Shown here piece by piece: positions 33,201 to 60,074 of a stretch of 64,000 nucleotides of DNA. Made by a program: the position numbers and the translations under genes. Numbering within the stretch: the stretch's first letter is position 1; each line of letters begins with the position of its first letter. Origin of the DNA: Iphione sp. A-MEVVRFRX5. Taxonomy: Eukaryota. Location: contig OZ320318.1 of the NCBI GenBank assembly GCA_976226885.1, forward strand, positions 77,252,001-77,316,000, given 5' to 3'. Below the pieces are notes generated by a model. The model saw only the letters and a program-made list of their open reading frames with translations, made no database searches and was not told the origin of the DNA.

Positions 33201-34192
33201 GGGGAGTAGGGTGTAAAAATGGCCCGTTCACTTATCCATCAAAATATAACTTAATTAATCAATTTGAAAAGGGGTTTATGTGCCAAGGGTAGTGGTTTTT
33301 CGAAGGAAATCTTCCTAATTTTGTAATTATCCGCCTGGACGGTGACTTTTTTTTCACGAAAAGGAGCTTTTATCATTTTTAAAGTGCTGGAATGCTGATT
33401 GGTTGTCATTTTTATAAAAATAAGATTTTTTTGCTAAGCATAATTTTAATCTCATGCACCTAAGTTTAGAAACGCAAGCTCTAAAAAACCCTCATTACCG
33501 GTAATTGATTCTTCAGCGGGTTGTGTTTATGAAAATGTTCATTAAAGGAGCAGATGTTGTACATACCTATTAAACGGAACATCCTCTTCTGCCGCAGCAG
33601 CTACATGTCGACGTGGAACGGATTATGTGGTCAAAGGAGGACGTAAATGTATATCTTAATATAAACATCTCAAACGTTAATAATGCCTTTCTACACTAGG
33701 TGTCCCTCGCTAAAATCTATGCCATACATTTACTACCGTATTCATTTCAGAGCCCCGGAACAAGACCTGCGTGCAAGTGTACATTACGTGAAGGAAAATT
33801 ACAGCCATTGGTGTAATAGATAGTGGCACGATCATGATTTAAGTTGCAGCTCGCACCGTCTCGTCTGTGATGTGGTAGGGCCAGGTGGTCATCGAAACAA
33901 TGCGTCTTGTGTAACCCTAGTGGGTTCTTCCGACATGGAGACAAATTTAGCAATTTGGCTTTTTTTTACTCATTGGGGAAGGAGAAAAAGTGTGGCGCAT
34001 CTATTACCTGTTACTCTGTTGTGTCCACTAGGGTGTGGACGATTTTATTTTCTATGTGGATGTGCACGTTTATTCCAGGTGTAATGCAACGGGATTGCAT
34101 TGTTATAACAATAACTGACTAAATCAGCACATAATTATATGTATTAACACAAATAAAATAGATCGACATTTTCTTACAAGATAGTACTCTAA

Positions 34193-34211
34193 TAGCCGAT
34201 TGTTAGTGTAC
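34193..34211 (+). repeat. Left TIR of Harbinger
   Basis: TAGCCGATTGTTAGTGTAC, preceded by TAA. Confidence 0.9.
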
Positions 34212-35619
34212 AGGTTAAAGTTAAAACCGGGATTAACTAACCCGGGGGTTAAGTCCGCTGTCCGCTAGGTTAACTGAACCGGCTAACCGTGTTAGCGGAG
34301 ATTCAACTAAACCGCTCAGAATTTTATGTGTACTTTGGGATTGCTGGGAAACGGGAAAGCATTTTACGGAATAAAGTTTATTATTTGATTTTTGTGTCAT
34401 ATGTGTTCATGTTTTACTTGAAATAATGTAATTTAGTAAATATTGACATACTTTTGGCCTCTCGAATTTGTTAACATCACTACTTTATTTCTTATCTGAC
34501 GTCACCTGTAGTTGGTTACCATAGTTACTCGCGGGAAAGCACCGGCGCCCAGGGCTCAACCGCTGGCGCGGCATGACCGCAAGTGTGAAATATCATAGCA
34601 TGCTGGCCATATTGACAATAATATTGACTATTTAGTTGCCTTGACGTAATTCAAGGAAGGTACAACAATTTTGGACATTGTCTCAACACAATGGAGCAGC
34701 TGCAGTTATTACAGAAGCAAGTTCACGCGGGGACATCCGGATGAAGGAGCATGTATGCGAGGTTGTATTGTTCCTAGGTTTTCATTACATTTTTTTCCTT
34801 AGCTTCAAGTCATTGTAAAGCCCTTCAAACTTGCAAAACGACAACTTCATTGTCACTAGCAAATGAAGTAAGTAACGCTCAGAAAATATGCCAAAATGTA
34901 CTACCCTCATTCGGTACTCCTAGTTTGAATCTCTTATGGCGGATGTTTTGAGGCTATATCCGCCTTTACTGGACAATGGGCCGTAACATGGCTGTGAAGT
35001 TTTTTCTTAGCAAGCCAGATTGTTCTATCAACATACGACGTATTTTCCTCAGCTTTTTTCATTTGGTATCTGTACAAAGTTATGGATAGAAACACCTTTT
35101 GGTTGCCTCTGCTTCCTACGTACAACTTATTTTACCGGTAAGTATGAGAGGTTAATTATAATCACTCTATTGTATGTTATTTTGTGTATTTGTCTTTTTT
35201 GTAATATGCATCAATATTGTCAACATCTCGAAATAACCCGATCGGCCTTTGCCAGCGTTTGATGTGTATGTGGTGTGTATCCGCTGGTTGGTTGAAAGTA
35301 GGTCAAAGGCGGAAGTAGCGGGATGATTAAAGTGTGTCAGCTCGACAGAGCACTCCCGTACGGGTCAGAATAAATGATGACTTTGGGACTGTAGTATTTG
35401 TGGCGACTACTTAATTTAATGAGCGGAGGCTAAAACAATCCCTTTTTTTGGTCCTGTGCTATTTCTTTTCAAATACCGATAAACAGTCATCTGCGTGAGA
35501 CAACAGAATGTGCGAGTGAAAGCGATAATAGGTGCAGTTCATTTTCTAGTCCCGATCGTAAGTGGGTCTGCTTGGAGTTCAAAGGCCACATTTAGCTATT
35601 AGCTTAGATTTCTACCGAA

Positions 35620-38548
35620 ATGGGCAAGCAGAAACGGAAAAGGGAAGATTCTATTTCCGAAGATGAAGAGGGGCAGTCTGCATCTGCCAAACATTCACAC
35701 AACTACCGGGAAAAGCATAAGGCGTCCGATCCCAATTTTATGAGGGATGAAGCACGCAAGCGGTGGCAGCGGCGGATACTACAAAATTACGGTGAGTTAA
35801 CTATTTCGGTCCTTGATGCATCTCGTTATTAAATGTATATTTGTGGATTTGTCCGCGGTTAACAATATATTCAATGTATAAGTTTCCGCTAGTGATGGAT
35901 ATTTTTTTTTGTCATTTTTAATTTTTTTTGCGTGCCAAACCATTAGACTCCTTCTCGATTTTTCACATGAGCGTTCCAAAATTTTTTTTTTTTTTGTTTT
36001 TGTCCGTAACCTTTATGTGCTCAAATCATATTACTAATGTTTATTAAGTTTTTTAACGGGCTGGTACATAATGCAAGTAGTATTAGATTATTGCCGGAAG
36101 TATTTAAAAAATGACCATATGTAATTTTGCAAAGTCTCACTTAATGATGTCTATATTTTGGTGGTATTAATTTTAGATAGGAAATTTCCCCTTGTAATTT
36201 GTTGTACGTCTAAGAGCCTTTCAATCCTTGGGTCGTTGATGTTGGAATTATCTCATTATTTATGTGGAGAAACCTGTTCCGCTAAGCTAAAAGTAATCGT
36301 TGGATAAACATCCAACTAGTTCAGTAAGTGAAGTAAGGGAATGCGGTCATGAATTACACATTTGTAAAGCATGCAGGGAACTTTATGTTCTGTTCAATTG
36401 TTCGCAAGTGCTCTTCTCTATTCAGTAGTATTGTGTTATTACCAATGTTCCCAAAAGAACGGATGCATGAAAACATTTACCATTCTTTATACAGCTGATG
36501 GCAAGGAAATAACGAAACCCCAACGTCGCGACCTGGACGAAGCGGAATATTCAAATCGGGTCGCCTTCTACAATAGCATCGTCAGTAGAGTCGGCTACAA
36601 ATATCGCGAAGCACAAAACCAGCACGTGGTTTTCTTGTCAGATGATGAGGTGGAAGATAAAGGTAGTCCAGAACAGTCGGTGTTGGGGTCACCTGTTAAG
36701 GAAAAAGTGCAATCTCCTGACCTTGGACATCACGATGAAACGCCTAACCCAACACAAGCTGACAGGAAACAACACTTTTATGAATCCGCTGATTTGTCAG
36801 GTACTGCATCAGAAGCTGGTTCTGTCGCTGCAATACAAGCTGTTGGGCAGGACTTGGAAGAATATGAGTCGAATTCCTCCCGTTCTACACGTGGACATAA
36901 GGTACAGCCGAATAAGTCAGCTGTTGGAACTAGGCATCATAAACGCCAAAGGACTGATAGACACGGACAAAATATTCATCAAATCTCTGAACATGACTAT
37001 GACAGTCACGGACAATCTAGAGGATCTAGAGGATCAACCCACCTCCGTGAAGAATTGGAACATGTAACGTATGGTGGAGCTAGTCGTGGTGAGTTTAATG
37101 CCTTTTTCCATTTGTTAATTATTCCTTGCAGTAAATTATATCGAGAGACTTGTCTTAACGTGACCAAGTTGTATGTAATAACTGCAGTTACGTACGTAGG
37201 ACGAACTGACTGTATACATTGTAGCATATTGGATTTTTTTTTTTTCCACTCACTGATTTTGAATAAATCGAGTCTGGGCATTAGTTGTAATGCAAGCAAT
37301 GTTAAAAAAGGCCACTTGTTTCCTTCACTTTTGGTCACAGTGTAAATTAATGAATGATTTACATATGGATGTCTATTCTACATATTGGCCGGACGTTTGT
37401 ATCTTTTTGTATGGATTGTCTTCTTTTATATAGAATGGAAAAGTTCTACATTTCAGTCCTGCGTCTAGAACGTATTTGACTGTGTTTGTGATGTCGTTCC
37501 TCATTTGTTTCCTTTTGTAGACCGCGTTGTTGACTTGTGTGTCAGGCACCTATTACACCACGACACTGCGATAAAAGATCAGGATAACACAATACGTGAA
37601 CTGACGGATAAAATAGGGGAACTATCCGTGTCTACTGCTGAAGTTCATGCTTCACTTGATGCCCTTTCAGTTGAGCGTGAGGCACGCATGAATGATGTAG
37701 AGAAATTAGATACCCGAATGCAAAGACTCACGGTTGGTTCTCAAGAGTTAGCAGCAGTGAGAGAAGCGGTGCGGACTGAGGTTGAGGACCGGAGGCAGGC
37801 TATTTTCCTAGTTGGAGAAGTCGTCAAAGTCCGCATCAGTAAATGTGAAGACAAGATTTCGGCGGCAGTCAGTAAGTTCAACAGAGAATCCCCATGTACT
37901 GGAACTGGCTGCATTGAACGCATACAGAAGTTTGAGGAAGACATTGACCAAAGAATGAATGGTTTGAGAGATTTTCTAACTCAAGAATTGGACTCGATGA
38001 AGCAAATGATAGAGAATGGAATGGCCGGCATGGAAAGGAATATCTCTGATATGCTTGAACACTTCATTTCTTCAAGGTCAAAACTAGATTGCCGTGGCAA
38101 TGAGCAGCTAAATGTTGTAAAGGTTGAAACAACAGATGAAGATGTCATCCACTTGGGTGACATACAAGGGACTGCGGCGACGGCCGAAGCCGAAAGTGTG
38201 GACGATACACTAAAACTGACATCACCACATTGCGGACTGACTGAAAATACCGGAACTATGTCAGGCAGTTTGTCTGAAAAGACTAACGTACCTGATGTTT
38301 CTACTGCGAGAGTTCAAAGCATTTCTAAAGTCATCAGGGAGGATGATTTACCTGCCGGTATCAATATGTTGGACAGTGACATTCAGGAAGAAGTCAAACT
38401 TCACTGTCACCCTGAAATATTCACAGATTCTGATGCCGGACATATATTGGCGGTTACTTCTTGTGTTGAAGCGAGTAATGACGAAGTAGGGAGAGAGGGC
38501 AGTGCATCTTGCTCGGCGTTGACGTCAACGGACGGTAATGTTGTCTAA
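35620..38548 (+). CDS. Harbinger cargo gene X: predicted 597-aa protein, basic N-terminus, disordered middle, long coiled coil; function unknown
   Basis: Exons 35620-35791, 36495-37088, 37521-38548. Both donors are G|GTGAGT, acceptors are TTTATACAG and CCTTTTGTAG, and both introns are phase 1. The total of 1794 nt is open from ATG to TAA. Confidence 0.8.
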
Positions 38549-38685
38549 TTGATGTGAGGCATATAACTACAGTATATAGCAGATGTTATCCATAGTGATG
38601 GTTTTATAATCGACATATAGACTTTATTTTGCTATCTCTCATGCACATGAATAATTTATATTCATGAGCAAACGTTGATTCATAC

Positions 38686-39023
38686 GGACTTATAGTTTCA
38701 AGGCATATTTCAGACTTAGTACATTGTACATGTTACTCCAGCATAGATCCTTTTCATTTCCTGGTAAATTGCGGTACTACTTCGTTGTATTTGTTGCTAT
38801 CGAAGAGAAGTAATTTTTTTTTTCAGTAAATATCAGGCTCATGGATGATTTATATGCATGATCAAATGGTGATTCATTAGGACTTATAGGCATATTTCAG
38901 AGTTAGTGCATCACACATGGTACTCAAGCCTAGATCCTTCTCATTTAATGATACATAGAGCTTCTACTTCGTTGTTTTTGTTGCTATCCCAGAAAATTAC
39001 TTTTTTTTCAGTAAATATAAGGC
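38686..39023. repeat. Imperfect tandem duplication, about 190 bp period
   Basis: GGACTTATAG...GGCATATTTCAGA...TAGATCCTT...TACTTCGTTGT...TTTCAGTAAATAT at 38686-38838 and 38880-39023. Confidence 0.8.
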
Positions 39024-39515
39024 ATCAAACTATGCTAGAACTTATTTTTTTCGCAAAATTTTGTGCAGGAGATCTAATATGTACGTGCAGAATGGATAGA
39101 AAAAACAAGGGGAATTTTCAGGTCCATTATCTTTTATTTAATCATACAGTCCTTGGGTGAGGATATCTGCAAGAATGAAAAGGATACTAATTATTGGTTG
39201 GCATTCATTTTCGTTATTTCATGTGGACTGGTAAAAAAAAAATGCATATCTGGTTCCCTCCAATATTAAAGTATTATTCTGACATGTCTGCACATATGTC
39301 TTTGTCATATTGAATTTTCAACAATCAACATTTGCATGTTTGCAGATTTGGTATGTAAGTTTCACTAATATTTTGGCTTAGCTCAAAAAAAATTCTTGCA
39401 ACATATAACCTTTAGAAGTAATGCAACAAAGTAATGTAATTTTTCTTGAACACAGTAACCAATGCTTGAGATGAATATGAACATTCAACTGGTAAAAAGA
39501 ACACGAAAATCAAAC

Positions 39516-41033
39516 TTAAACTGCATCTTTGTACTGACCGACAGCAAGAACAGTCTCCCAGACCATGACACACTGTTAATTGATACATGCAAGTTTGGTT
39601 TCAGTACCCAGGTAATGAGAAAATATATGTATATACGCAAGGTGATTGTAAGTAATACATGTAAAAAGTTGGTTAATGAGTGAGCATTGCATACTTACTC
39701 CATTGCAGACCGGAGCAGGTGGGATCTGCGAAAAAAAGGTGTTTAAATACATTTAAGTAATCATCGGATAAATAAATAAATACACAATCCATTTACACCT
39801 TTGATTGCCAGCATAGCTCGCGGTCTTTGACAAACATTTTCCCCTATGGATATTGAACTTAGCACCATTATTGTGGATAGTATATTATAATGTGGGAAGC
39901 AAATGTCATGTATTAATCTGAACTAGCTTGGAAGATGCTTAAGACAATTTAATTTGAAACTAACCGCTAGATCTTGACATGAGTCTGCAGGCAGCAGAGC
40001 AGGTCCATCCAATATGGTCACTGTGCTTGGTGCTGCCCAGTGGCACAGGATGCAGCGGTAGACACGAACTAAGTAGCAGATAAAATCATAAAATCAAACA
40101 TAGGCATGTAGGTAGATGGACATTTATATGTTTGATTGAAGTGCAAGTGATTATTTTGAAAGAAGATTAAATTGTCATATTTACTTTTATAGACCCATGT
40201 CAGCACCTCTCCGCCAAGTCGGTTTTCCTGCAACAAATTACGAAAGAAGATAATGTTGGTCTGCGTGGTGTGTGTGTATGCGTTCTCAACATATTTCACG
40301 TAACTATGACGGCATATTTCCTAACATTACGAAAACAGAAAATTGTCCGTGTGCGTGGTGTGTGTGTATGCGTTCTCAACATATGTCACGTAACTATGAC
40401 AGCATATTTGCTAACATTACGAAAACAGAAAATTGTCCGTGTGCGTGGTGTGTGTGTATGCGTTCTCAACATATGTCACGTAACTATGACGGCATATAAT
40501 TACCGTCAACACCCGCTGAGCTACCGGAAGCAAAGCCATATTAATTAGCAGCTAGCAAGAACACACGAGACCATAGTTGGGAAAACTTGAACGACTGAGC
40601 GCGCCCACACTGGGCATCGACATAAATACTAAGCAGGAGGCGCCACCTGACGCTACCTCTCCGAATTATACGTGCGTATCCCTAACATACGCTAGGCATT
40701 TCCTAACATTACGAAAACAGAAAATTGTCCGTGACGGCATATTTCCTAACATTACGAAAATAGAAAATTGTCCGTGTTCGTTGTGTGTGTGTATGCGTTC
40801 TCAACTATGATGGCATATTTCATAAAAGTTTGGATGGCTTAGTAAGATGCGATCTAGTACCGCGCCATACTAGATTCGCGGTGCAGTTCCGATCTGACAC
40901 AGAAACCTGCTAGAAAATGACTTTCATACTGCAACTACAGACATAAAACATATGCACATGATTCCCTCACTCATCTTACACACACTGGCACCAATGATTT
41001 GTGGTGTAGAAGGCTTAAACTCACCTGATCCAT
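39516..41033 (-). CDS. Harbinger cargo gene Z: predicted 79-aa protein with CxxC...CxxC (zinc-ribbon-like)
   Basis: Exons 41033-41025, 40227-40185, 40068-39965, 39725-39699, 39572-39516. Donors are GTGAGT, GTAAAT, GTTAGT, GTAAGT; acceptors are TTGCAG, CTTAG, TTTTCGCAG, AACAG. The 240 nt are open: MDQENRLGGEVLTWVYKIRVYRCILCHWAAPSTVTILDGPALLPADSCQDLAIPPAPVCNGCVMVWETVLAVGQYKDAV*. Confidence 0.5.
40263..40815. repeat. 90-bp tandem repeat (about 2.6 copies, 40263-40497) plus rearranged partial copies (40698-40815)
   Basis: GCGTGGTGTGTGTGTATGCGTTCTCAAC units start at 40263, 40353, 40443. CCTAACATTACGAAAA(C/T)AGAAAATTGTCCGTG recurs twice more near 40703 and 40746. Confidence 0.9.
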
Positions 41034-42540
41034 GCTTTTCTCTCAAGTGATTACTCTCTTGTCAAAAGGGTTGAAGCCAGAGGAAGTACAGGCAAGGTAC
41101 CAGTACAAACCACTGATGCAAAAACCTTCTCCAAACGTCTCATTTCTTGGTACTTTGTTGTGTAAAATCTAGATATGAATTTAGAAAAGATTATTTCTTG
41201 ACAAGAGTGACATTCCAAAAATGACCTACCAAAATTAGTTCTCCGCAGGACCCCTAGGGGTCGTTTCATCTATTGTTTTGGCTACGCACACATGGAAAGG
41301 CCTTCACGCACCACGCACCGTGTCGTGCGTGGACACCCCACTGTCTCCAAAAGTTGTCGGATGTATGGAAAGACCGCCATAGTATGACGCACCACGGACA
41401 CGGATCCGTGTCCGGGCAGACCGGACAATGTTGGGTTTTGACCACGCAACGTGGTCCGGGTGCGTGTAATACGCATATATGGGTATGCTATACTGAAATA
41501 CAGTGAACTCAGGTATCACGCACAGACGAGAAATACATTATTTAATCTTTTTATTTGAAATTTACTTGCAATTAACAAAAAAATGGGAAGGTAATGACGG
41601 CTAAGGCGTATGTTCGCGGTTATACGCCCGGGCATCCGCCATTATACGAAATCTGCACTAATTGACAAGTGTGCATATGGACTTAGGTCCGAACAAGCCT
41701 TCATACAGACTTCTTATTCACATGTAATAATTTGACAGTATCCCGGCATAGGAGTATAATAACACACGATACAGCTTGAGCATCAGGACATGATTGTTTT
41801 GGTTATGTATACAGTTCTTAAATTATATACATATAAGTAGACTGTACTTCAAATATTTCCAGATATTCGATTCAGATGAGACAGACACCTGGAGACAGAG
41901 AGTGAGCCCTACATTCAAGGAGAATGTACATGTTGCTTGCTGTAGGATAGAGCACCTATGGCATCCAGACCCTAAGCGAAGAAATAGATGACCGCAAATG
42001 AACAAATGCCCTTTTCAGGGCACTTTACTCTCTTGAGAGTTTATGATCAGATTAACACGCTTTGAATTGAATGGTATATGGAATTTCCATATGTGAATAA
42101 AAAAATTTTAATGAGTGTTCCTTGTATGTGTGAAGACTAAAAGGAACAATGGTACAGTTTCATTAATTAATTGAAATATTTGAAATGAAGGAAACCCTCC
42201 TACGAAAGTCGAAACTTGCAGCATTTCACTAACTGTTTATTTTAGTTAATAATAGGCAGCATTATAAATGCATACTGCTATCAATTTTCATTGCATTAAT
42301 CCGCCTGGTGGATAAATGACATTTACCTTCATTTATTCATCCGGACATTATGATTAAATAACCAATAGACAATTGACTTGATCACAATTAAAATTCCACA
42401 GCTATGGTCTGGTATGAGTTATAAAAAAAAAACAGTATGCAACGAAAAAAGTAATATCACTGGCGCTTAACTTGCAATCACGTGTACGAGACATTACACG
42501 AGATCTGTCATAGTGCAATCGACATCAGTGTCAGGGCAAG

Positions 42541-45500
42541 ATGAACGTTCCCGGGACAAGTAGAGAGGTGGCGGTCATGGATGCTGAAGATTCCCAACGT
42601 CAAGAGAACTGGAGCCTAGATGAGATGCGGAAGCTGCTGCAGATGGTGTACGACAGGGGTGTGAAGCCGAGCAGTCCCAAAGACACGTATGAGGAAAGAC
42701 GGAAAAAGAACGCCGCATGGCAAGAGCTTGCGGACGAGTTCAATAAGTAAGTATTAAGACATTTTTATGTAATGTAATACGACTACAAATGCTGGTTGTG
42801 ATCAAACACTTTCACAAGTTTCTTTGTATATGGCGGCAAACCCCGAAATGGTAGTTCCACCTTGTGTTAATGGTTAGCAACTATAAAACGGTCGAAACGC
42901 CATCTAGTGCAACATGATGGATGTCGTCTGCATTCGCGGCGTGAATGACAGTTTACTGAGAATTCCCGGAGTAGCACATTAACATAAAGCTTACATGGCA
43001 ACTGATACAGGAGAAAGGCACACATATCATTGGATTCCACCTTGGGATACACCACCCTGGAGAGAAGCGGACAAAAATCTACTTTTGCAATTGGCAATTG
43101 AATACAGGCTGAAGGTCTTAGACCGCCGCCAAATGCGATCACGCGCGGACAATGACCGCCACTATCACAGATGGTTGCTGGCATTTAGAGCCTTCAACAG
43201 GTAACCAATGCAATGATACTCTTTACATGTTTCTTTCGAATACTACTCATCATTATAAGAAAAAAATAACATCCATCAGGCGTCATTTATTCAGATTTTG
43301 GCTAGTTTCAATGTATTGTTCCAGAATTGCCCACCCGAGGCGCTGTATGGCTCATTTTGGATTCAAGATGATCGAAGTTTGCATTGAGGGTAATAAATCC
43401 TTTGCGGATATTCCTATTGATAATTTCTAACAGTAGAAAACAGAACGGAACTCGTTAAACAACTGTAATAAAAATGCCTAACAACATTTTACCACGAAAT
43501 GTGGTTGGCAGACAATCCAATAAGACTGGCACACCATCTGGCGGATTATCAAGTAGTTATTGCTTCACACAGCTATCAAGAAAGGAACAACTAATGAAAG
43601 CCATGCATAACATTCATACTGTTTTTTTTTAGTACCTTGCAGTGTAAGAACCATTTAACTGAACTTACTGCAATTCTTATTCACTAACAGCTGGATATGC
43701 GGATGCTCTTAATTGACCATGTGAGACGCACCAAGGACATCCAATGATTTGTGGCGATGAAGATGAAGATATTCTCCAGCGGCCAATAAATAGATTTCTC
43801 CTAAATACCTATTTTCGATGTCACACCTGTATTAGAAATAAAAGCAGTTACAATCATACTAGTGCACCTGTGTCTATTTATTTCAACCTAGCGCAAATTT
43901 CAAAAATGAATCTAAATGAATCAGCTAACGGATATAAGTACAACAACTGAACATATGAAAGAGAAATTGAACTCATATTAATTTCCTATGAAGGAACACT
44001 TATTTGAATTTGTCTATTAATTACACAGTAGTACATTGGTAAGAGTACATCCAATCGGAGGTATTGCCAGTCTTTGATAATTAGAATCATTTTATAATAC
44101 GTTTAAATTGGACATTCCTCCCATTTGGAAATATTTATTGTATTCAATGTCTTTTCTTTACAAGGGGTGCCATGCTCCACAGAGGCGTAAAACAGATCAG
44201 GCAAAAGATGAAGAACTTGGGAACGAAAGGTGAATTTTCCACTTGAGCACCATGTCCAGAAAAGGTCGAATAACTGGCAAGACGGCATGGCTGGACTGAT
44301 TTTTATTCGTTTTTGGTAACTCTCGAAAGACAATTAAGTGGGGCTATTAGACATTATGAAAGCAATTTGATAGCAAATACCTGATATGTTTATTGCAATA
44401 TGTCCAGGGTTTCATGCGACTTTACAATCATTTTGACAGTTCGTAAGTATACCGACAACGTAAATGCCACCGGAGGAGGACCTGCACCACCACCACCCCC
44501 AACGGATGTCCGAATGTACATTGAGTTATTCACAGACAACGGAGGACCGGAAGGGGAACTGACGGACTCCATTCAAGTAGAGATAGGTGGGAAGTATTCT
44601 TTTACGTGAGTTATAAAGAAAAATCTATATACCACTTCCTAAGATAGCTAGGTACCTATACTACATGGTTATTTACATGTCTAGTATTCATGGGATAGAC
44701 ATTAACAAGAAAACTTCCGCTTGTTTTATTGAATAGAAGAACCTGACGTGGACGAAATATACGATCTGCCTGGCGAGGCGTGGCCTGAATGGGGTCCGGA
44801 TCAGCCGGCTATTGCAGAGACGGATGTCGAGAGGTTTTTAGTTAAAACCACAAAAAGCCATGTGCAACGAACGAGCACACCCCTCAAGATCACAGACGGC
44901 ACCACACGTCCAACTCTGCCAGCGACGGTGTCAAGGCCACCATCGTCAGCGCAAGAAAACCAGGTCCATACCACGTGTCCACAGCGCAGTCTGGAGCCTA
45001 TACCATCCACATCCAACATGAGCAACGAGCGGACCTTGGTCGCCTCTTCTGCTGCCAATTCCGAGACATGTATACAACCAGATGCTGCCCCACGCAAACG
45101 GAAGAGGAAGCAATCTAGCCAGGCAGAACCCCCAAGTGAGATATTGCATAATCTAAAATGTACATACTAAATCGACTGGAACACCACTGTGTGGACTAAT
45201 TACTGTAGGCAGTCTAAATGCTATGCTCTATTAACTCCATTAAATTAAACATGAACCATTTCTTTCAGAATTAGAATTATATAAATAGTACATTTGTTTC
45301 AAATACAGTCACATCATCCAAAGGTCTTGAGAACAAGGTCCAGCCAGAGTCAACTTTCACTGTGGGACACAATCACAGTAACAGTGCCAGAGGACAAATT
45401 GAAAATTGTCAGCAACTTTTTTCGTATTTATATGTCCGCCAATACAGTCGTGCCTTTGTTGTCCTTAACAAAAGACCTCACATAATACCAACATTTTTCT

Positions 45501-45832
45501 TCAACCACACAGGGCGTCGCATCAGTACAGAGACGTACGAGGAGAAGGCAAGGTTGCGGCAACTGGATATATCTAATGTGGAGGCAGAACTCAAGTACAT
45601 ACAAGAGAAAAATGACTTTCTTAAAGAAGAGCATAAAATGCAGATGGCTCTAATCAAGGCACAACACGACGCTGCTGTATCCGCGCAAGAACAGAGGAAT
45701 CTGGAGCATAAAGGGCTCATGACCGCGCTGACGAATGTCAGTAATTGCTTTATTGCTTTGAAGGAGGCGCTGGTCCCGAAGAAGGTAACAAAAGAAAATG
45801 TATCCACATATTCATGTAGTAGCAAGATGTAA
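42541..45832 (+). CDS. Harbinger Myb/SANT-like DNA-binding protein, 378 aa, with two candidate first exons
   Basis: First exon 42541-42746 (NWSLDEMRKLLQM...AAWQELADEFNK) or 42995-43200. It then continues through 44165-44229 (RGVKQIRQKMKNL, helix 3), 44440-44586 (TGGGP motif typical of Harbinger Myb partners), 44737-45135 and 45513-45832 (C-terminal coiled coil). Phases are consistent; total 1137 nt. Confidence 0.85.
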
Positions 45833-46671
45833 GGGCTAAAGAAAATTATTACACTGTCCATTACATGGGGATATAATTACCAAATGCAATTTTAGAAAAT
45901 GTATTTCTAGTAGTGGTGTTTTCATTCCAATATTTCTCAATTGCATGGGACATGCCCTTTAGCCCCGAGTAAAACAATGGAGAAATTCACTATGGCTTGT
46001 TGTCAGGAAATCTTCACATTACTTCTTTGTAGATTATTAATATAGTTGTTAAGATGAATTAAGAAGAAAACTAGATTGTGGGATGTTTCCTGGCGTGAAC
46101 TCTCACCAGAGAGTCTGAATTCTACAGTGCATTATATTTAATAGGACAAAATTAATACTGCAAAAAAATCATACGATATTCCTAAGGTGACTTTTTCCGT
46201 TCAAGTATTTTTTCAATGGCGGACAATGATATTTTTGAATTAATCCTCGCGAGAACATTTTGTTTCTTTTGTCATTTTGGTATTAAAAAGTGTCTTTCAA
46301 TTAACTGAATGCCTTCTAGAGTTGTCTATGTTCATGTCAAAGCAAAACGCATACTAGCTGATATTTTGACAAAGGAGAGGATTACGATGAACAGACATAG
46401 AAACGAAGTTTTCATAGTCAAGAGTCATATGCCCATAGCAGTATACTTTAATAAATAAGGAAAACAAATTATGTAAGGTTGATTGTAAAATGTGAAGAGT
46501 TGTTTATTTGATTCCTCTGCAAGAAACGTTTACCATATAATGAATAGCTACATAGAATGATTGAAGTTATATTTTTATAATTGCCTGTGCCCTTAATTTT
46601 AATAATCTCAATTACGTAAAACAATAATAATTGGAGATTAAATTGCACAGGTTAAAGGATTGTTTGACCGC

Positions 46672-48796
46672 TTACAGCGACTCTGCCACACGGTCGCGCA
46701 AAATGTTCCTGCGGTCATTCCGAGCAGCGCCGTCCTGATGGAATGCAATGGCGCGCCGGCGCATGTCCGGAATGATCACTTCGTTGGGATCGGGGTCAGG
46801 CTCCCCGATCCTCCGCGCAATGTTGTGCAGTACAACGGCGGCCACGACGAGTGTACATGTCCGCTGGGGTGATGTTCTGCAGCCGTAGTGGAGTAGTCTG
46901 AAACGACTTTTGATGACCCCGAAGGTGTTCTCCACCAACACACGTGTCGACTTCAATCGTCGATTGAATTCTTCTTGTTTTGGTGTCTTGGGCTTCCTAT
47001 AGGGAGTCAGTAACCTGTCGGTGCACACGTACCCGCTGTCCCCCAGGAGGTTACTTGGCCGAGGCACTATGTTGGAGATAATAAACAAATTAAACATGAT
47101 GGACATAATTTATTGAAAAAGGACTTCGCAACAAACGGACATAGTCAATTATGCATCCATATATTAGGAACAAATATAAGAGGACAAGATTGATAAATGT
47201 CTGTAGGCAAAAGAGGCTCAGAAAGCTAAAACTTATTAACTGTGGTACATACGTGAATCGAGGTAGACACGGTTCAAGTCAGAATTCCTGAAGATACGCG
47301 CATCATGCACACTTCCTGCCCAATGTGCGGTACATTCACGGACTACAAAGTGGCTGTCACATACCATCTGCAATTTGGTTGCAACATGAGTAATTAATAA
47401 TTAATATTCAAAGGCATAGTAAGTGTCGGCCACAACATGCTAGAGTAATGTCAAAAGCACAAATGGTTATAGGTAATGTCTGATATGAATTGTCCATTTT
47501 ACATTTTGTTCCCTTTGTTCGACATTGTCCATTTTAAATGCATATGACAAGCAAAATTGGTTATAGTTTGCCGGAAAAAAATTGAAAAATTTAGAGGCTC
47601 ACCTGCACGTTAATGGAATGGTTGCCGTGCCTGTTGTAGAAATTGGCTGTCGTGTCCGTCAGAATAGGGTAGTCGAGGTCAATATGGGTGCAGTCTATTA
47701 GACCTACTACGTTGGGCATCCCTGCGAAAGTAAAAGTATACCATATTTATGACAACAAGGTAAAACATCAAGCAAGAAATAAATGTTGACAATAGTTATA
47801 TTACTTTAACTCACATCAATACACCTTTCCAATACAACACAATCATACATAAACACACATCTTAACAGCAAAGAAAATATCTAGCATTTCTACTCAAATA
47901 CATTGGAAAATAGGTTGAATATCTAATAAATCACCACTACATTTTTAGATATGTATTTCATGGCTTGGGTACAAGCCTTTCAAAAAATTCTCCCTCTTTC
48001 AGATATAGCATGGCATTAGTTCACTATAGACTGAATGTGTGCCTCTTGCACCCCAATGATATGGTATAAGTAACTCGGACTTGGCGGGAATTTCATTTGT
48101 CTATTATATCCGCTAGAGGCGTCACTAGTAAATTAAAGAGAGGGATTCGGTGGTGTAACACAAGGCGGCGGTAGTATGCTGTGACGTTATTCCGTCAAAT
48201 GTCCGCCATGCAACGTACGTTACTCACGGGCAATCCTCAGGAAATCCGCCTTCACTTCTGGGATTTCTCTAAGCTTTGGCATTTGAATGAAGTGCTTGGC
48301 TTGCAAGGCTATCATATGGGCGACCTTGTGGATGATACGGCAAACCGTAGACACATCCACCCTGACGGTGTCGCCGATGACACGGTGCTCTGCCCCTACA
48401 GATACATACATCCCAATGGTTACGGAGGTAAGCCACATTTAAAAAATTGAATTACATTGAAAATTTTTCAATTCGTGTGATTTTCTTTATCTATAATTGA
48501 TACTCATAACAGAAATATATCATAAAAAACTCACCACAAGCCAAAAATCGAAGGAAAATGCACATTTGGATAAGTGCGGGTACCGGGCGACCGCAATTAT
48601 TTTCCTTCATTAGCAGACGCAGGAAGGTGGCCACCAGCAACAGAATGGTTTGCGGTCGAAAACGAAATCTTTTGAGCACCTTCTCCTCCCTATACATTAG
48701 CAGAGGGTTCAAGGGGTCTGATAAATGCCTCAGCGTGTAGTCTTCTTCGTCTTCTGTACGCCTACGAGTTCGTCTGCTCAAACGTCGGGCAGCCAT
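46672..48796 (-). CDS. PIF/Harbinger DDE transposase, 352 aa, apparently intact
   Basis: Exons 48796-48535, 48395-48228, 47721-47603, 47367-47253, 47066-46672; all GT-AG, 1059 nt open. Family motifs present: GLIDCTHI, NRHGNHSINVQ, VCD, WAGSVHDARIF, LLGDSGY, VENTFGVIKSRF, LHN. Confidence 0.95.
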
Positions 48797-48940
48797 TTTT
48801 AAGCGTTTTAAGTATTTAAACCTACTAGGGAGCCAGGGTTAGTTTAACCGGTTTAACTTTACAAAGCGGACATTCTTGCAAACGGGTTTAGCGGATATGC
48901 CTAGCGGTTTTAACTTAAGCGGATTAAGTCATCGTTTTAA

Positions 48941-48959
48941 GTGCGCCAACAATCGGCTA
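48941..48959 (-). repeat. Right TIR of Harbinger
   Basis: GTGCGCCAACAATCGGCTA, followed by TAA. Confidence 0.9.
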
Positions 48960-50689
48960 TAAATATATACAAGTCTCAACAATGTGTCCACCTTTGGTTT
49001 TTAATCAAATCGACTGCAATAGGCCTCATACCTTCTAGCTGACAAGCTGCAAAGTCATCAACCCAGGCATATATTGTTATATGAACACCTTGTTCACACT
49101 GCACTCTTTATAAAATATAATACATCCGGGCTATTTGGAAAGTATTTTAGCGAAGAAAACAAGCCTGTGTAATGCTTCCCAGCTTGATGTCCTCACAAAT
49201 CCTTTCTTTGCAAAATGATTTCACTGTCTACCTGATTGTATTCTTGATGAATCATGTACATCTCGTGTACCTAAAAGATACTGACCACATTCTTGATCTG
49301 ACCCGAATAATAAGTATTTTACAGATAGAATATCTGAAGAAAAACAGCTTTCGCTGACCCTTTGGCCGTCTACCCGGGGCGACCACGTATAGTGAACCTG
49401 CACGGTATTACAGATATACAGCATAAATTCGTTAACCTGGCGGGAATGTTTGCATATATAGCCTCGAAAAGACAGTGTAGATTTGTGCGCGTGCCTGTAG
49501 ACGCGCCTAAGTAACGGGAAGCTCACGTCTAATTGAAAGCACACTCACGGCGAACCCTATTCCTGATGCCTGAGGAGACGCCGGCCGCCGTCTGTCCTAA
49601 ACACTGACCGCTAGGAGGCGTCCCGTCCCACCACTTAAGAAGTCCGTCAAGCCCAGGGCTCGGGTACGGAGTAGCCCACCCTGCCTAATCCTGATGAACG
49701 GCCCGAGTGATGGCGAATGGCGGCCGCCCCCATAATGCCTCTCTCCTCGATGGTCACGTGGTCAGCTGGTTCACCTGACTCCGCCAGGTGGCGTCAGTGT
49801 GCCCGGGTGGGTATGAGGATAGGTCCCTGCGGGCTCGTGATATACGAGGCCCGCCGACGGAGATGGGGGTTTCTCTACACGTCCGGCCTGACAGCTAGGC
49901 CCATATGCAGTGTATATAGGGATATTCTCATCTGAGGATTGTATCAGATTTTAGACTTGGCTCCAGCTATAAAAACATGAAAGGACCCGGACTTAAACCA
50001 GCCGTGTCTCATAACTACCGAGATGCTTTTCAGAGATTAAAGGAATATTGCATTGTTGTCACCATCTGCAATTTCGAGCCACGCATCCAGTCACTGTATC
50101 AGACATATGCTCGATATATACATTTAGAAATGACGAAAGAAACCTGCGCCCACTCCCCCTGTAAGACAAATGGACGATAAAGACCTCTGCTGAGAGAGAA
50201 GAGAAATAAATTGTTTCATATTATTTCATTCTGACGTGAAGCCATAATTACAGTTGTGCATATTTTGCTGCTTACGAGGAGCGCTAAATTGAAAAATAGA
50301 AAAATGGGGAAGGCATACATTTACTGCATTTAAGGTTCTGCAGATTATAAGAATGGATGTACCTCACTCTATTAGACTTAACCATATATTAAACTCATAA
50401 TCACTAAGGGATTGGTCAAGAGGTACGCAGCACCCCTAGGCCATGAAACTGGCCAGAGTAGGAGCAGTTTCATTACAAAGACTTCAAAAAGCAAGCAAGA
50501 AATTTAGAGGAACGCCTTAGCATCCTTATTGGGTGCTGTGATTCATTCTTCACTTCGGTATTCGATAAAGTGTCAGTTTCCTGTTTCCCTCAAAGGCGGG
50601 GTTTCGTGCGATCTCGATCTGGTTTTGTGTGCACTTTACACAATGATAGAACCTGCGGTAAGACAGGGAAAGGGAAACATAGAGCGAGC

Positions 50690-52760: not shown

Positions 52761-52963
52761 CTTATTGTGTGAAACGTTAAGGTATCCTTTTTTGAGATTG
52801 CAATAGTGTGAAATACTGAATGAATTCTAACAGCACATGGAAAATGAAATATTGCAGGTGACTTATTGTGTAAAACGTTAAGGTATTCTTTTTATAGAGA
52901 TTGTAATAGTGTGAAATACTGAATAAATTCTAACAGAACATGGAAAATGAAATATTGCAGGTG
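52761..52963. repeat. 101-bp tandem duplication (2 copies)
   Basis: CTTATTGTGT(G/A)AAACGTTAAGGTAT...GAAATATTGCAGGTGA starts at 52761 and 52862. Confidence 0.9.
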
Positions 52964-54821
52964 ATCGCTTGAATGCATAACTGTTTGAGTTTGTAACTAG
53001 AAACTGCCAATGTTTCAGTCAAAATCAAATGAGATGCATGTATACAGATGTACGAAAAATAATGATAAAGAAACGTAGCATACCATGTAATATACTTTCT
53101 TTAAATTTGACATTAGAAACAGCCATAGTTTCAGTCAAATGTTAAGAATGAATGAAGAAAAATCTTCAAGGCTTTGAATATTGTGGGCTCGGATTTACTG
53201 CATGCATCGTACCCATACTTTCTGAAAACTTGGCGTCCACGAATTTCATCATTGCAAAGAGTTTTGAGTATCAGGGCTAATTTTCAGGGCTATATTTCCA
53301 TCTTTATCTGAATGAATCTATGTATTCAAGTTTCGAGAGATGCCTGTTACCCAATTGGAGTTTATGTCGCTGTTTACGTGTGATACTCCTCTATATCTAT
53401 TACAAGGAATTACGTTAGGGCGTCGTTTTTCGATACGGAAATGTATAGGTATCACATCCACCTTTCAGACAGGACCCTTATTAATTCTAGCTTCCCACGT
53501 CCGTCTGTGCGCTCTCCCGCGTGTATGTGAAATAACAATCTCTTACTCAATCAGAGCAACAAGTATATATATGCATATGCAGTCGATCTCAGCTTTCTTT
53601 GTTCCTGTCTTTCCTCCTCCTTCGCATCTCTTGTCTTTCTCCCTCCATCACCCCTCGTTTTCTTCCTGGCACGTCAGACTCCCTGCTTTTTCCCCCTGAA
53701 CCTTTGTCCACCATGCGTATATATTACACAGATATCTATTTCGATAACATCTGTTTATCAGGAGAACACTGAAGTAGCTCATAAAGGACAATGCATATAA
53801 AGATGTAGACGATAGAAAACCACACATTCGATTCTAGTGTGTCATTCATAGCCACAGTAAGTGACGTTGCACGATTATTTCTGGTATCAAGATAGGCCGA
53901 TGAGAGAAAATGGTTAATAAAGAAAGTAAGCTTTCTATACAGATATATCTGGTCAGTTTTTTTTGGGCATCGTTCTTTAAATAGAGATGAAGAACTGATG
54001 AGATGGCATGAATTACGATCCAATCACGCAACAGTACCCTTTTTATGGAATCTGGCGTCGTGCTTCATATCAACAACGGTAGTTACCGCAAAACCTTCGT
54101 AAATGTGTATAGTACTGAAAGTAGAGAGGGAGCCCACCTGCCACCTGGTGGAGAATACTTTACTTTCAATCTTCTATGGACGCAATGCTGGGTACAGGCG
54201 GCGCTACCGTAGGCACAGTCAGGTCTCAGGCTTGACTGAAGATGGTTTATTGGTATTGTTCACTACTGACCAAACACCAAAACATTTTTCTTTTGGGTGG
54301 AGAAAACCATGTAGACCCTCTAGCCAGTTGTCTTCATCTCACGATTGAACTTGTTGTTGTCAAGTGTACTCAAGTATTCCGTACCTTTTTACTCAGATAT
54401 AATATTTATCAGAATTCTTCGAGGTGCCACCCTCCCTTAATACGTTCTTTCGAGCACATATCGTCTTATGTAAATTCTTCATGTACAACCATCACCATCT
54501 ATCCTAGTATCACTGCAATCAATGATTTGCAATGTATGTATGAATTTCTGTAGTTGCTGTAATTCATCTTTGGCTGACCAAGTTCCTTTTGTTTACCGGC
54601 TATGTCTATACTAACTAACATATTTATCTTTCTCTGATATATGCTAGAATGACCAACACGGATACAGGTTGGGAGCTTGCATACAAATAGAAGACCTTTA
54701 TTAAAAAATTTTCGAGACGACTGTTGGTTCGATACGTCATATATTCTGTTGGCATGGTATTGCGTAGCTACATGCTCCAAGTTGCTAGGAGAGTCAACAA
54801 TCATATATACTTATAAATATA

Positions 54822-55412
54822 CTATTTATAATACATATATGCTAGAATGACCAACACGGATACAGGTTGGGAGCTTGCATACAAATAGAAGACCTCCAAA
54901 GCTCCAAATAGAAGACACCTGAAGGCCAGTAACATAGCTAGCCAAAGGACATAGTCAAACTGATCAGATAAATTGAAACATCTAGATAGCAATAACATCT
55001 CCTTAATACCGACTGCAAGGGCTTTCTTAGGTGGTCTGTTCCTAGTACGCTTGATACCCCGTAAAAGCTCGTTAATATGAAAATTTCTTTCAAAATCCAC
55101 AAACATCTGAGCTTGTTTAGAATAATACACTACTGTTGACATATAATTCTTGATGGATGAGAAACACAACGACCTAGCTAAGAAGGTCAGGAACATGCAC
55201 ATTTGAAAAACACTACATGGCAAGGTTGCATAACCATGTTCACCACAAAAACGACTATATATGTTCCATTGAGACTTCCTGGTCTTCTTCGTATTCTCCG
55301 CTGACGCCTGCTCCATCAGATGGTTCATCTCTCTCTTCAGCACCCTTGTCTTTTCTGCAAACAGATTGAATGACATTGCTACAACAGCACATCTTAGACC
55401 ACCTTGTAACAC
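54822..55412 (-). pseudogene. Tyrosine recombinase, truncated just before the first catalytic Arg
   Basis: The N-terminal SAM-like part is present (ASAENTKKTRKSQWNIYSRFC...SSIKNYMS...LLRGIKR), then LLAFRCLL. The frame then runs into repeat B1 and no R-H-R-H/W-Y residues follow. The ORF overlaps the RNase H 3' end. Confidence 0.85.
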
Positions 55413-57367
55413 ATAAGATGTTAAACATTTTTAGATCATATGATCTAGATAACGCATCTGCGATCACATTCTCTTTACTCTTAATGTATTCCACTCTTAC
55501 ATAGATATTGTATAGACACATTGTCCGGAAGATTTCTCTTAACCAGAACATGCATGTTACATTTTTACTGCGTCCAGTTTTCAACATGTAAAAAACACAC
55601 ATATTGTCAGTAACAATTTTTACACAAGAGTCCCGATACTGAATGCCCCAACGTTTTAGGGCCAAAACTACAGGCCATAACTCATATACATTATACATTT
55701 ATATGTGCATCATAAGAGTCAGTTGTCGGTTTCTTCTCAATGTGTTCTACCATTCTGTCCAGTGGGCATTGAACATTCTCCCATTTGCCAACAAACCAGT
55801 CTTTCTCACAATGTGCACCAAACATAAGCATTGACGAGTCAGTTGTGATAGTCGTTGACACTACTTCATCATGGATTATTTTCCTTTTACCATTGAATAC
55901 CTTCACAAAACTGGACCACCATGTTAAGTCCTCTTTGACAATGTCTGGAACCGCTTTACACTCTCTATAACCACAAAAACTATTGCAGAAGTTGTAGATC
56001 CTCCTTGTATATGTACGTCCTCCTCTCACAATGGTTGCGCTGTGTGCGAGCAGTCCTGCGAGTCTTTCCACGTCTTTCTTCTTTATTTCTCCTCTTTCAA
56101 GTGTCTCGTTCACCCTCGCTTTGGTTTCCTCTACTTTTTCATATGGCAACCTGAGCTCCATGTCTTTTGAGCTAATCTCAATACCTAAGAAGGTACACAC
56201 CTGGCTAGGTTCCTTTAGCTTCGACATAGAAACCTCAAAACCTATACCTTCCATTACATCAATCATTACTTCGCAATAAAATTTACAACTCTGTTAATCA
56301 TGGCCAACCAATATGAAATCATCCAGGTAGTTAACGCAGAAACCTGCACAACGGTACATGAACTCATATTTGATAAAATCTGAAATCACTGAAAAAATAT
56401 AAGGAGCACATTTCAGACCGAAACATAACGTGTTGTTAACATAGTAGGATTCTTTTTCAGAGTTCTCCCATGTGAAACCTTGAAATTTCCTATGTTCGGG
56501 GTACACTTGAACGCTCCTATACGCATTTTTCAAATCTACCACTACCATAAACTCATCACCATCGATATGCTTGCCAACATCGTCTACTGAGTTGTAACTG
56601 AAGGTTTTATGGGTAGACTTCATAAAATTGTTTATACCACTTTCTTTAGGCATAGAACAATCCGTGATGGGCCTAAGCGACCCATCCGCTTTAAACACAC
56701 CTCCTAGAGCATTTACACATTGGGGTTTTTCTTCAACAACACTTACAAAACCACTCTCAATTTCACTAGAAAGTTTAGACTCCATCTGAATCTTAAATTC
56801 TTCAGTCAAAATTGAGTTATAATTTTTACAGTGGTATGATGTGTTACAGTCTTCATCAACGATTCTGAACCCTTCCGTTAGGCCTGACCACAATAATAAT
56901 TTTTTCTCTATGTCAAGTGGGCTCCTAGACAAGGGCCAAGCACATCTACATTGTTTCAATTTACAATCAGTTCCACCAAGAGCATATCTGCAATGACAGG
57001 AGTTGTTTAAACAACTGATATACACTGGGATAATACTCCCTTTCTCAGGTGATCTGAGGCAAACCACACACTCCTCAGCTTGATTATGACTTACAACGAC
57101 CATGAATTCCTGCAACCAAGAATTTTTAAAGTCATTACGATACCTTGTCAAGTCCATACTGTCCCGCATGACAGGACTGTCTGCAACGTCAGACGTGTCT
57201 CCCGAAGAGACAACAGGGGCACTGGCCGATTCACTCTCACTTTCAGCAGCATCATTCAACCTCTCCTCCTCGGCCAGATCAGTTGATAAGACAAATCTAT
57301 CCTCTAACTCAATTACCGACACTATTTGACTAATCCTAGAGAGGTTGTCAGCTGATGATCCGCACCG
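55255..57367 (-). pseudogene. pol: Ngaro pol (Cys-rich N-terminus, RT, RNase H), disrupted
   Basis: RT motifs: LRPITDCS, VVDLKNAYR, LCFGLKCAPYIF, NYLDDF. RNase H motifs: TTDSS, HINVYEL, VTDN, ENVIADALSR. There is an in-frame TAA at 56296-56294 and a 7-bp duplication (ATACATT x2, 55686-55699) that causes a frameshift. Confidence 0.92.
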
Positions 57368-59905: not shown

Positions 59906-60074
59906 NNNNNNNNNNNNNNNNNNNNNNNNNNNNNNNNNNNNNNNNNNNNNNNNNNNNNNNNNNNNNNNNNNNNNNNNNNNNNNNNNNNNNNNNNNNNNNN
60001 NNNNNNNNNNNNNNNNNNNNNNNNNNNNNNNNNNNNNNNNNNNNNNNNNNNNNNNNNNNNNNNNNNNNNNNNNN
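59906..60074. other. Assembly gap (169 N)
   Basis: Run of N. Confidence 1.

What the first reader, a model, noticed from the sequence alone, without database searches (positions are those of the whole stretch)
34193..48959. Giant four-gene PIF/Harbinger transposon
Seen: matching TIRs and TAA duplications enclose 14.8 kb with four spliced genes in alternating orientation: X (+), Z (-), Myb (+), transposase (-). All four models are open with canonical splice sites. Known: typical Harbingers are a few kb and encode only a transposase and a Myb/SANT protein; a few lineages carry an additional ORF. Inferred: a young, probably autonomous element with an expanded, conserved cargo (possible anti-silencing or regulatory accessory proteins). 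This is the best candidate for an undescribed system in the window.
Basis: partly seen in the sequence, partly recalled or inferred. Interest (0 to 1): 0.9.

Follow-up and report, generated by a model that had tools for sequence, protein, structure and literature searches.

The report
Oversized Harbinger transposon with orphan third gene
This is a real, intact-looking 14.8-kb PIF/Harbinger DNA transposon that carries, besides its transposase and Myb-like partner, one well-supported extra gene for a coiled-coil protein with no relatives anywhere; the proposed fourth gene is no better than chance, and only this one copy could be examined.

Summary
The ends are real. A 19-nt terminal inverted repeat (first 12 nt perfect) occurs only at 34193 and 48959. 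TAA flanks both ends, and both ends share subterminal motifs found nowhere inside.

Three spliced genes are solid:
- A 360-aa DDE_Tnp_4 transposase with an intact D-D-E triad.
- A 378-aa Myb/SANT-like partner.
- X, a 597-aa protein in three exons with strong splice sites.

X has a basic N-terminus, disordered stretches and about 190 residues of long helices. It has no homologue in 1.84 billion representative proteins, in word-indexed searches, in Pfam or in the metagenome and viral collections searched. "Conserved cargo" is therefore unsupported.

Gene Z (79 aa, four small exons) is reproducible, but equally long open spliced models arise in 100 of 100 shuffles. I do not count it.

No nested TIR, LTR or transposon domain surrounds X. 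The nearest retrievable relative is an oyster Harbinger (39% identical transposase). It is a compact 3.3-kb, two-gene element.

No second copy, empty site or transcript could be examined, so mobility of the unit and any role for X are inferred.

The scan has noted third-gene Harbingers on other pieces of this genome. One was followed up (s1-334797) and is also an orphan nuclear coiled-coil gene. I could not check those notes.

The parts
34190..34192 (.). Left target-site duplication TAA
   Evidence: Read directly. Low information, because TAA is the family's preferred target.
34193..34211 (+). Left terminal inverted repeat (19 nt; first 12 nt identical to the right TIR)
   Evidence: (pair I18) and 9: 2 matches in the window against 0.03 expected.
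34193..34330 (+). Left subterminal region with repeated TCCGCT, GTTAA and AACCG motifs (likely binding sites for the Myb-like protein)
   Evidence: 8-mers shared by the two ends cluster only at the ends. TCCGCT occurs 6 times in the two ends, 52-fold enriched.
35620..38548 (+). Gene X: exons 35620-35791, 36495-37088 and 37521-38548. It encodes 597 aa: a basic N-terminus, disordered regions, about 190 aa of long helices and a disordered tail.
   Evidence: open; GTGAGT donors; phase 1 at both introns. (site scores). (shuffle maxima 174/239 aa). (helices, heptad periodicity, disorder). (no relatives).
38639..39023 (+). Tandem duplication of about 195 bp (78% identical), just 3' of X
39516..41033 (-). 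Proposed gene Z (exons 41033-40982, 40068-39965, 39725-39699, 39572-39516; 79 aa). Not supported as a gene.
   Evidence: model reproduced. (first donor score -8). (100 of 100 shuffles give chains as long or longer). (composition is coding-like, but the test does not resolve reading frame). (no domain).
40237..40809 (.). 90-bp tandem array (2.9 copies at 40237-40497, plus partial copies at 40698-40809). It lies inside Z's proposed first intron.
42541..45832 (+). Myb/SANT-like partner gene: exons 42541-42746, 44165-44229, 44440-44586, 44737-45135 and 45513-45832. It encodes 378 aa with a helical C-terminal region rich in charged residues.
   Evidence: open, GT-AG. (exon 1 matches Myb_DNA-bind_5 positions 1-49 of 78, E 0.003, and Myb_DNA-bind_4, E 0.009).
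42995..43200 (+). Possible alternative first exon of the Myb gene. It has the same length (206 nt) and splice phase as exon 1, and shares W at residue 60 and a final F-N-K/R.
   Evidence: the alternative model is open. (no Pfam hit and no significant BLASTP similarity to exon 1). Unresolved.
46672..48796 (-). Transposase gene: exons 48796-48511, 48395-48228, 47721-47603, 47367-47253 and 47066-46672. It encodes 360 aa. The catalytic D (IDCTH), D (GDSGY) and E (VENTF) are present.
   Evidence: DDE_Tnp_4: E 2.5e-18 for the last exon, 1.5e-5 and 0.0024 for exons 4 and 3; weak HTH_Tnp_4. (open model). (nearest relatives are HARBI1-like, 39-47% identical).
48810..48959 (-). Right subterminal motif region, including the right TIR (48941-48959)
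48960..48962 (.). Right target-site duplication TAA
   Evidence: Read directly.

Best explanation
The interval 34193-48959 is one full-length PIF/Harbinger cut-and-paste DNA transposon. Its working core is canonical. A DDE transposase is transcribed inward from the right end, and a convergent Myb/SANT-like partner gene lies beside it. By analogy with characterised Harbingers, the partner binds the repeated subterminal motifs (TCCGCT, GTTAA, AACCG) and brings the transposase to the 19-nt TIRs. The transposase then excises the element and reinserts it at TAA, duplicating those three bases.

About 8 kb lie between the left end and the Myb gene. They hold a genuine third gene, X, and about 4 kb of repeat-containing non-coding DNA. 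X encodes a probably nuclear protein made mostly of disordered segments and a long coiled coil. It is most likely lineage-specific cargo, either picked up at the DNA level or evolved in place, and it travels with the element. If X acts in transposition, the likeliest role is as an oligomerising scaffold or adaptor rather than an enzyme.

Shown: the ends, the three gene models, the domains, and the lack of relatives of X. Inferred: that the 14.8 kb moves as one unit, that the Myb-like protein binds the subterminal motifs, and any function of X. Z is not counted as a gene.
For: - The TIR pair is unique in the window and correctly inverted.
- Both ends share about 150 bp of the same motifs, and these cluster nowhere else, so there is no internal end of the same family.
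- The transposase has a DDE_Tnp_4 domain, an intact triad and an open 5-exon model.
- The Myb-like partner is convergent with the transposase, as in the oyster relative L001.
- X is 597 aa over 3 exons with consensus GTGAGT donors and good acceptors. Shuffled sequence gives at most 174 aa at equal site quality and 239 aa at lax quality.
- No inverted repeat inside 34330-42540 exceeds shuffles (27.6 bits against up to 29.5). There are no long direct repeats other than two tandem arrays, and no transposon domain in the ORFs there.
- All three reading frames, about 1,335 codons, are uninterrupted. This argues for recent activity or for selection.
Against: - Only one copy could be seen: there is none elsewhere in the window and none in the metagenome or viral collections.
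- The TAA duplication does not prove a single insertion event.
- X starts 1.4 kb from the left TIR, and 4 kb without a supported gene separate it from the Myb gene. This layout would also fit host DNA trapped between ends.
- X has no homologue at all, so neither conservation nor selection is demonstrated.
- The nearest relative found lacks any such cargo.
Confidence: 0.6

Rival explanations
1. Composite or accidental pairing. A canonical two-gene Harbinger of about 6.5 kb lost its true left end, or two family members inserted near each other and lost their inner ends. The TIR at 34193 would then belong to another copy, and X plus the spacer would be host DNA lying, or trapped, between them. 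Such a macro-transposon may or may not move.
For: TAA on both sides is expected for any two independent Harbinger insertions. X is an orphan with no link to transposons. The 38.6-42.5 kb stretch has no supported gene. The closest relative is compact, at 3.3 kb.
Against: There is no internal TIR at up to 3 mismatches and no internal cluster of the subterminal motifs. This reading therefore needs clean loss of two inner ends. The outer ends are in the correct inverted orientation and have matching subterminal architecture.
Confidence: 0.2
2. One reading: a four-gene element in which both X and Z are conserved accessory genes, for example anti-silencing factors.
For: Z's model is open with GT-AG sites. 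Its exon composition resembles that of the real genes, with only 1.1% of null samples scoring as high. Notes from the same scan report many Harbingers with extra genes in this genome (unchecked).
Against: Chains as long as Z arise in 100 of 100 shuffles, and longer alternative chains exist on both strands of the same region. Z's first donor scores -8. The composition test does not resolve reading frame. No homologues of X exist, so there is no evidence of conservation.
Confidence: 0.1
3. X belongs to a different mobile element nested inside the Harbinger.
For: Nested insertions are the commonest way transposons grow. Tandem repeats flank the 3' side of X.
Against: No TIR or LTR pair lies around X above chance. 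There is no repeat of this DNA elsewhere in the window. No transposase, integrase or RT domain lies in any ORF between 34.2 and 42.5 kb.
Confidence: 0.05

Closest known systems
Canonical animal PIF/Harbinger elements. Examples are the two-gene elements surveyed in PMC4482050 and the oyster (Saccostrea cucullata) element fetched here as L001, about 9826-13166.
   Same: DDE_Tnp_4 transposase with introns, a convergent Myb_DNA-bind_5 partner gene, short TIRs with subterminal repeats, and a 3-bp target duplication.
   Different: The oyster relative is about 3.3 kb with only two genes and a CTG duplication. This element is 14.8 kb, has a TAA duplication, and carries a third gene plus about 4 kb of spacer. 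The transposases are only 39% identical.
Harbinger-superfamily lineages with extra genes: HarbingerS with a SET methyltransferase in oomycetes, TET/JBP-carrying PHISTA elements of rust fungi, and ISL2EU with a YqaJ protein (PMC12730594, PMC4482050).
   Same: A gene additional to the transposase lies inside the TIRs of a Harbinger-type element, so the idea of a three-protein Harbinger has precedent.
   Different: Most of those extra genes have recognisable enzymatic domains and recur across families and species. PHISTA also carries a further protein whose family the paper does not name. X has no recognisable domain or relative, and it sits in an animal-type element that keeps its Myb partner.
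Gene capture (transduplication) by DNA transposons: Turmoil-1, a PIF/Harbinger element of C. elegans (PMC2572040), and Pack-MULE/Pack-TYPE elements (PMC6431247, PMC8903248).
   Same: Non-transposon coding sequence carried between the TIRs of a cut-and-paste element.
   Different: Those cases carry fragments of identifiable host genes, often in non-autonomous elements. X is a complete, intron-containing, apparently intact gene with no identifiable parent, in an element that keeps both transposition genes.
Other third-gene Harbingers noted by this scan in the same genome (for example s1-334797, followed up as an orphan nuclear coiled-coil gene).
   Same: Same genome, same superfamily, and an orphan extra gene predicted to encode a nuclear coiled-coil protein.
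   Different: There the extra gene sits inside an intron of the Myb/MADF gene. Here it lies between the left end and the Myb gene. No sequence similarity could be checked.

Membership tests
PIF/Harbinger superfamily | Transposase with a DDE_Tnp_4 (PF13359) catalytic domain | tested here: met
   The last exon scores E 2.5e-18, 66.6 bits, against a cutoff of 24.8. Exon 4 scores 25.1 bits and exon 3 scores 18 bits.
PIF/Harbinger superfamily | Catalytic D-D-E residues present and the reading frame intact | tested here: met
   The spliced 360-aa model has no stops and contains IDCTH, GDSGY and VENTF. I assigned the triad to these motifs by eye from my own knowledge of the family.
PIF/Harbinger superfamily | 3-bp target-site duplication of the TWA type | tested here: met
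   TAA lies on both sides.
PIF/Harbinger superfamily | Short terminal inverted repeats | tested here: met
   16 of 19 nt match and the first 12 are perfect. The pair is unique in the window.
PIF/Harbinger superfamily | Second gene encoding a Myb/SANT-like DNA-binding protein | tested here: inconclusive
   Exon 1 alone matches Myb_DNA-bind_5 positions 1-49 of 78 at E 0.003, 17.9 bits, below the 21.7 cutoff. The third helix lies in exon 2, and the spliced protein could not be submitted by reference. The position and orientation match the Myb_DNA-bind_5 gene of relative L001.
PIF/Harbinger superfamily | Mobility: multiple copies, empty sites, insertion polymorphism | not testable with these tools
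There is no copy in the window or in public collections.
Transduplicated host gene (Pack-type cargo) | An identifiable parental host gene homologous to the cargo | tested here: not met
   No homologue of X exon 3 was found among 1.84e9 representatives. Word-indexed searches of exons 2 and 3 found none either. There is no paralogue in the window. A parent in this genome itself could not be searched for.
Nested transposable element | Own TIR/LTR and TSD around X, or a transposon enzyme domain | tested here: not met
Coiled-coil protein (X) | Long helices with heptad periodicity | tested here: met
   AF2 (single sequence) predicts helices at exon-3 residues 2-122 and 128-188, with block-mean pLDDT 67-89. 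The 3.5-residue hydrophobic periodicity peaks over X residues about 240-445. No PDB fold match reaches E <= 0.001.

The most novel reading that the evidence does not exclude
Harbinger transposons of this animal lineage are regularly three-component elements. Besides the transposase and the Myb partner, they maintain a fast-evolving, orphan nuclear coiled-coil protein, of which X is one. This protein would take part in transposition or in evading host silencing. That would explain why many independent Harbinger copies in this genome are reported to carry an extra gene.
Probability: 0.2. Interest if true: 0.65.

Novelty: new variant of a known kind. Interest (0 to 1): 0.42.

Why it matters
In the papers I read, Harbingers are described as a two-protein system. 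Extra genes were reported there for fungi, oomycetes and the ISL2EU group, plus one case of captured gene fragments in C. elegans. An animal Harbinger that keeps an intact third gene and reaches about 15 kb would show that this superfamily tolerates and transmits sizeable cargo in animals. If the third gene recurs across copies, as unchecked notes on this genome suggest, it offers a testable case of a transposon-borne accessory protein of unknown type. As it stands, this is one copy with one orphan gene, so the value is moderate. It is mainly a pointer to a genome-wide survey.

Tried and rejected
**Homologues of X**
- Word-indexed search of exon 3 and of exon 2: nothing.
- Exhaustive phmmer of exon 3 against 1.84e9 representatives: zero hits at E <= 0.001.
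- ESM Atlas: only generic coiled-coil or disordered look-alikes below 0.9.
- Pfam: nothing above noise.
- Foldseek against the PDB on the AF2 model: nothing at E <= 0.001.

**Other copies**
- Self-BLAST of the element against the window: none.
- X exon 3 against metagenome and viral contigs: none.
- TIR plus subterminal pattern against metagenome contigs: none.
- The scan's own index by sequence: blank.

**Nested-element hypothesis**
- Rejected: no inverted repeats above shuffles, no LTR-like direct repeats, and no domains.
- The longest listed inverted pair (35439/41552; 37 nt, 70% complementary, T-rich) has no target duplication, and I treat it as chance.

**Other checks**
- tRNA or SINE and Rfam signals in the spacer: none.
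- Codon-usage likelihood test for Z: uninformative about frame. Real genes score as well out of frame, so I use it only as a composition hint.
- Similarity between the two candidate Myb first exons: not significant by BLASTP.
- I did not submit spliced proteins to Pfam or the homology tools, because that would have meant typing long sequences.
Full report
**Observation**

The left junction reads ...GTACTC TAA TAGCCGATTGTTAGTGTAC... and the right junction reads ...GTGCGCCAACAATCGGCTA TAA ATATAT.... The 19-nt pattern occurs exactly twice in the 64-kb window at up to three mismatches, once on each strand, against 0.03 matches expected from shuffles (also pair I18). The element therefore spans 34193-48959 (14,767 bp) and is flanked by TAA.

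The TAA match is weak evidence for a single insertion event, because this superfamily targets TAA/TWA. The subterminal sequence is more telling. About 150 bp inside each end share short motifs such as AAGTTAAAACCG, CCGCTAGG, TCCGCT and AACTAACCC. The 8-mers common to both ends pile up only at the two ends: 18 and 19 hits in the terminal bins, and at most 3 in any other 250-bp bin. TCCGCT occurs six times in the two ends, a 52-fold enrichment. There is thus no hidden internal end of the same family.

**The canonical genes**

On the minus strand, five exon blocks run from 48796 to 46672. They splice through GT-AG sites into an open 360-codon frame.
- The last exon matches DDE_Tnp_4 at E 2.5e-18. 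Exons 4 and 3 match the preceding parts of the same model, and exon 2 gives a weak HTH_Tnp_4 hit.
- The motifs IDCTH, GDSGY and VENTF are present. I take these to hold the catalytic D, D and E, from my own knowledge of the family.
- The nearest proteins in a 5.8-billion-protein collection are HARBI1-like fragments, only 39-47% identical. The single named one comes from the oyster Saccostrea cucullata. This genome itself is therefore not in the searchable collections.

On the plus strand, five exons from 42541 to 45832 give an open 378-codon frame.
- Exon 1 matches the first 49 of 78 positions of Myb_DNA-bind_5 (E 0.003) and also Myb_DNA-bind_4 (E 0.009).
- Exon 2 supplies what looks like the third helix.
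- The score is below Pfam's cutoff because only part of the domain lies in one exon, so I rate this feature inconclusive on the numbers and convincing in context.

The two genes converge tail to tail. The same arrangement is seen in the oyster relative and is reported for Ectocarpus Harbingers (PMC12477816).

**Gene X**

The exons 35620-35791, 36495-37088 and 37521-38548 join in phase 1 at both introns. The donors are ACG|gtgagt and GTG|gtgagt, and both acceptors are pyrimidine-rich. The result is an open 597-codon frame.

I wrote a dynamic-programming search for the longest spliced open frame. At equal site quality it gives at most 174 aa in 100 dinucleotide shuffles of the region, and at most 239 aa in 60 shuffles with very lax sites. 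X is therefore a real coding gene, or was one very recently.

The protein has these features:
- Lysine/arginine-rich stretches at the N-terminus and around residue 205, which are plausible nuclear localisation signals.
- Long segments predicted to be disordered.
- Two long helices covering about 190 residues, with block-mean pLDDT of 67-89 and a clear 3.5-residue hydrophobic periodicity over residues about 240-445.

It has no Pfam domain and no fold match in the PDB. No sequence relative was found in any search:
- The word-indexed search of exon 3 and of exon 2.
- An exhaustive phmmer of exon 3 against 1.84 billion cluster representatives, which gave zero hits at E <= 0.001.
- The ESM Atlas.
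- Metagenome and viral contigs.
- The rest of the window.

X is thus an orphan.

**Gene Z**

Its first donor, TGT|gtgtaa, scores -8 on a generic metazoan donor matrix, and its last acceptor has a poor pyrimidine tract.

At Z's own thresholds the same 1.7-kb region yields a 190-aa chain on the same strand and a 239-aa chain on the opposite strand. All 100 shuffles yield at least 79 aa, with a median of 176 aa. Even when donors must score at least 1.9, 61% of shuffles reach 79 aa. Being open with canonical splice sites is therefore no evidence here.

A codon-composition score places Z among the real genes, with only 1.1% of null samples scoring as high. However, the same score cannot tell frame from out-of-frame in the true genes, so it reflects base composition only. 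Z's first intron would contain a 90-bp tandem array. I put Z at roughly one chance in ten of being real.

**Is X part of the element?**

- There is no inverted-repeat pair above chance within 34330-42540. The best scores 27.6 bits, while shuffles reach 29.5.
- The only direct repeats are two tandem arrays.
- No ORF in 38.6-42.5 kb has a domain.
- None of this DNA recurs in the window.

A nested transposon is therefore unlikely.

The main rival is a composite. In that reading the left TIR comes from another family member, and X plus the spacer are host DNA between two ends. It needs clean loss of two inner ends, but I cannot exclude it with one copy.

The layout tells how the element departs from its relatives. 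The transposase starts 163 bp inside the right end. The oyster relative, the only one I could examine, is about 3.3 kb long. It is bounded by CAGGCA...TGCCTG ends and a CTG duplication, and holds just the two convergent genes, each lying within a few hundred bp of its end. Here, 8.3 kb have been added between the left end and the Myb gene.

**Mechanism**

Cut-and-paste transposition by the DDE transposase follows from family membership. Binding of the Myb-like protein to subterminal repeats, and its recruitment of the transposase, is inferred from work on reconstructed Harbinger3_DR and on rice Ping/Pong. I am citing that work from memory, not from a paper read here. PMC2836001 states that two element-encoded proteins are required.

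X most probably rides along as cargo. If it has a function, its architecture (nuclear signals, disorder, coiled coil) points to a scaffold or adaptor rather than an enzyme. An anti-silencing role is possible but untested.

About 1,335 uninterrupted codons across three genes suggest a recent insertion or selection. This is an inference.

**Comparison and novelty**

A survey of 380 PHIS families describes two ORFs as the rule (PMC4482050). Extra genes are documented in several cases:
- HarbingerS, with a SET domain, in oomycetes.
- PHISTA, with TET/JBP plus a third protein, in rust fungi.
- ISL2EU, with a YqaJ protein (PMC12730594, PMC4482050).
- Turmoil-1 of C. elegans, which captured fragments of two host genes (PMC2572040).

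Giant cargo-bearing DNA transposons are reviewed for other superfamilies (PMC6431247, PMC12477816). My searches found no paper describing an animal Harbinger with an intact orphan third gene. Repbase could not be consulted.

I therefore class this as a new variant of a known kind.

**Earlier notes of this scan**

More than ten first-reader notes on other pieces of this genome report Harbingers with a third gene. One was followed up (s1-334797) and described an orphan nuclear coiled-coil gene inside a MADF intron, again from a single copy. I could not test any of these notes. They are a lead that the phenomenon may be general in this genome. They raise the value of a genome-wide survey and do not change the evidence for this locus.

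Noticed in passing
window 54705-58389 (-): A retroelement is bracketed by 136-bp direct repeats that are 100% identical (54705-54840 and 58254-58389). ORF 56297-57322 carries RVT_1 (E 2e-11). The identical repeats suggest a very young copy.
   Followed up: partly
window 42995-43200 (+): A second ATG-initiated exon lies in intron 1 of the Myb gene. It has exactly the same length (206 nt) and splice phase as exon 1. It shares W at residue 60 and a terminal F-N-K/R, but has no significant BLASTP or Pfam similarity. It may be an alternative first exon.
   Followed up: partly
window 40237-40809: A 90-bp tandem array (2.9 copies, 93% matches) with further partial copies lies in the non-coding spacer of the element. 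It creates spurious ORFs of 81 and 125 aa (stop to stop).
   Followed up: partly
window 38639-39023: Two tandem units of about 195 bp, 78% identical, lie immediately downstream of the X stop codon.
   Followed up: no
window 41250-41540: A short G+C-rich patch has open frames of 72-82 aa in several frames on both strands and no Pfam match. Its origin is unknown.
   Followed up: partly
L001 about 9826-13166 (Saccostrea cucullata contig JAVVLV010021490.1): A compact Harbinger of about 3.3 kb with CAGGCA...TGCCTG ends, an apparent CTG target duplication, subterminal CTTAGGA repeats and two convergent genes (DDE_Tnp_4 and Myb_DNA-bind_5). An unannotated 230-aa gene lies 3 kb outside it.
   Followed up: partly
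window 59906-60074: A run of 169 N (assembly gap or masked stretch). I left it untouched.
   Followed up: no
window 52761-52964 and 25697-25973: Further short tandem duplications: units of about 101 bp at 92% identity, and units of about 75 bp at 78% identity.
   Followed up: no
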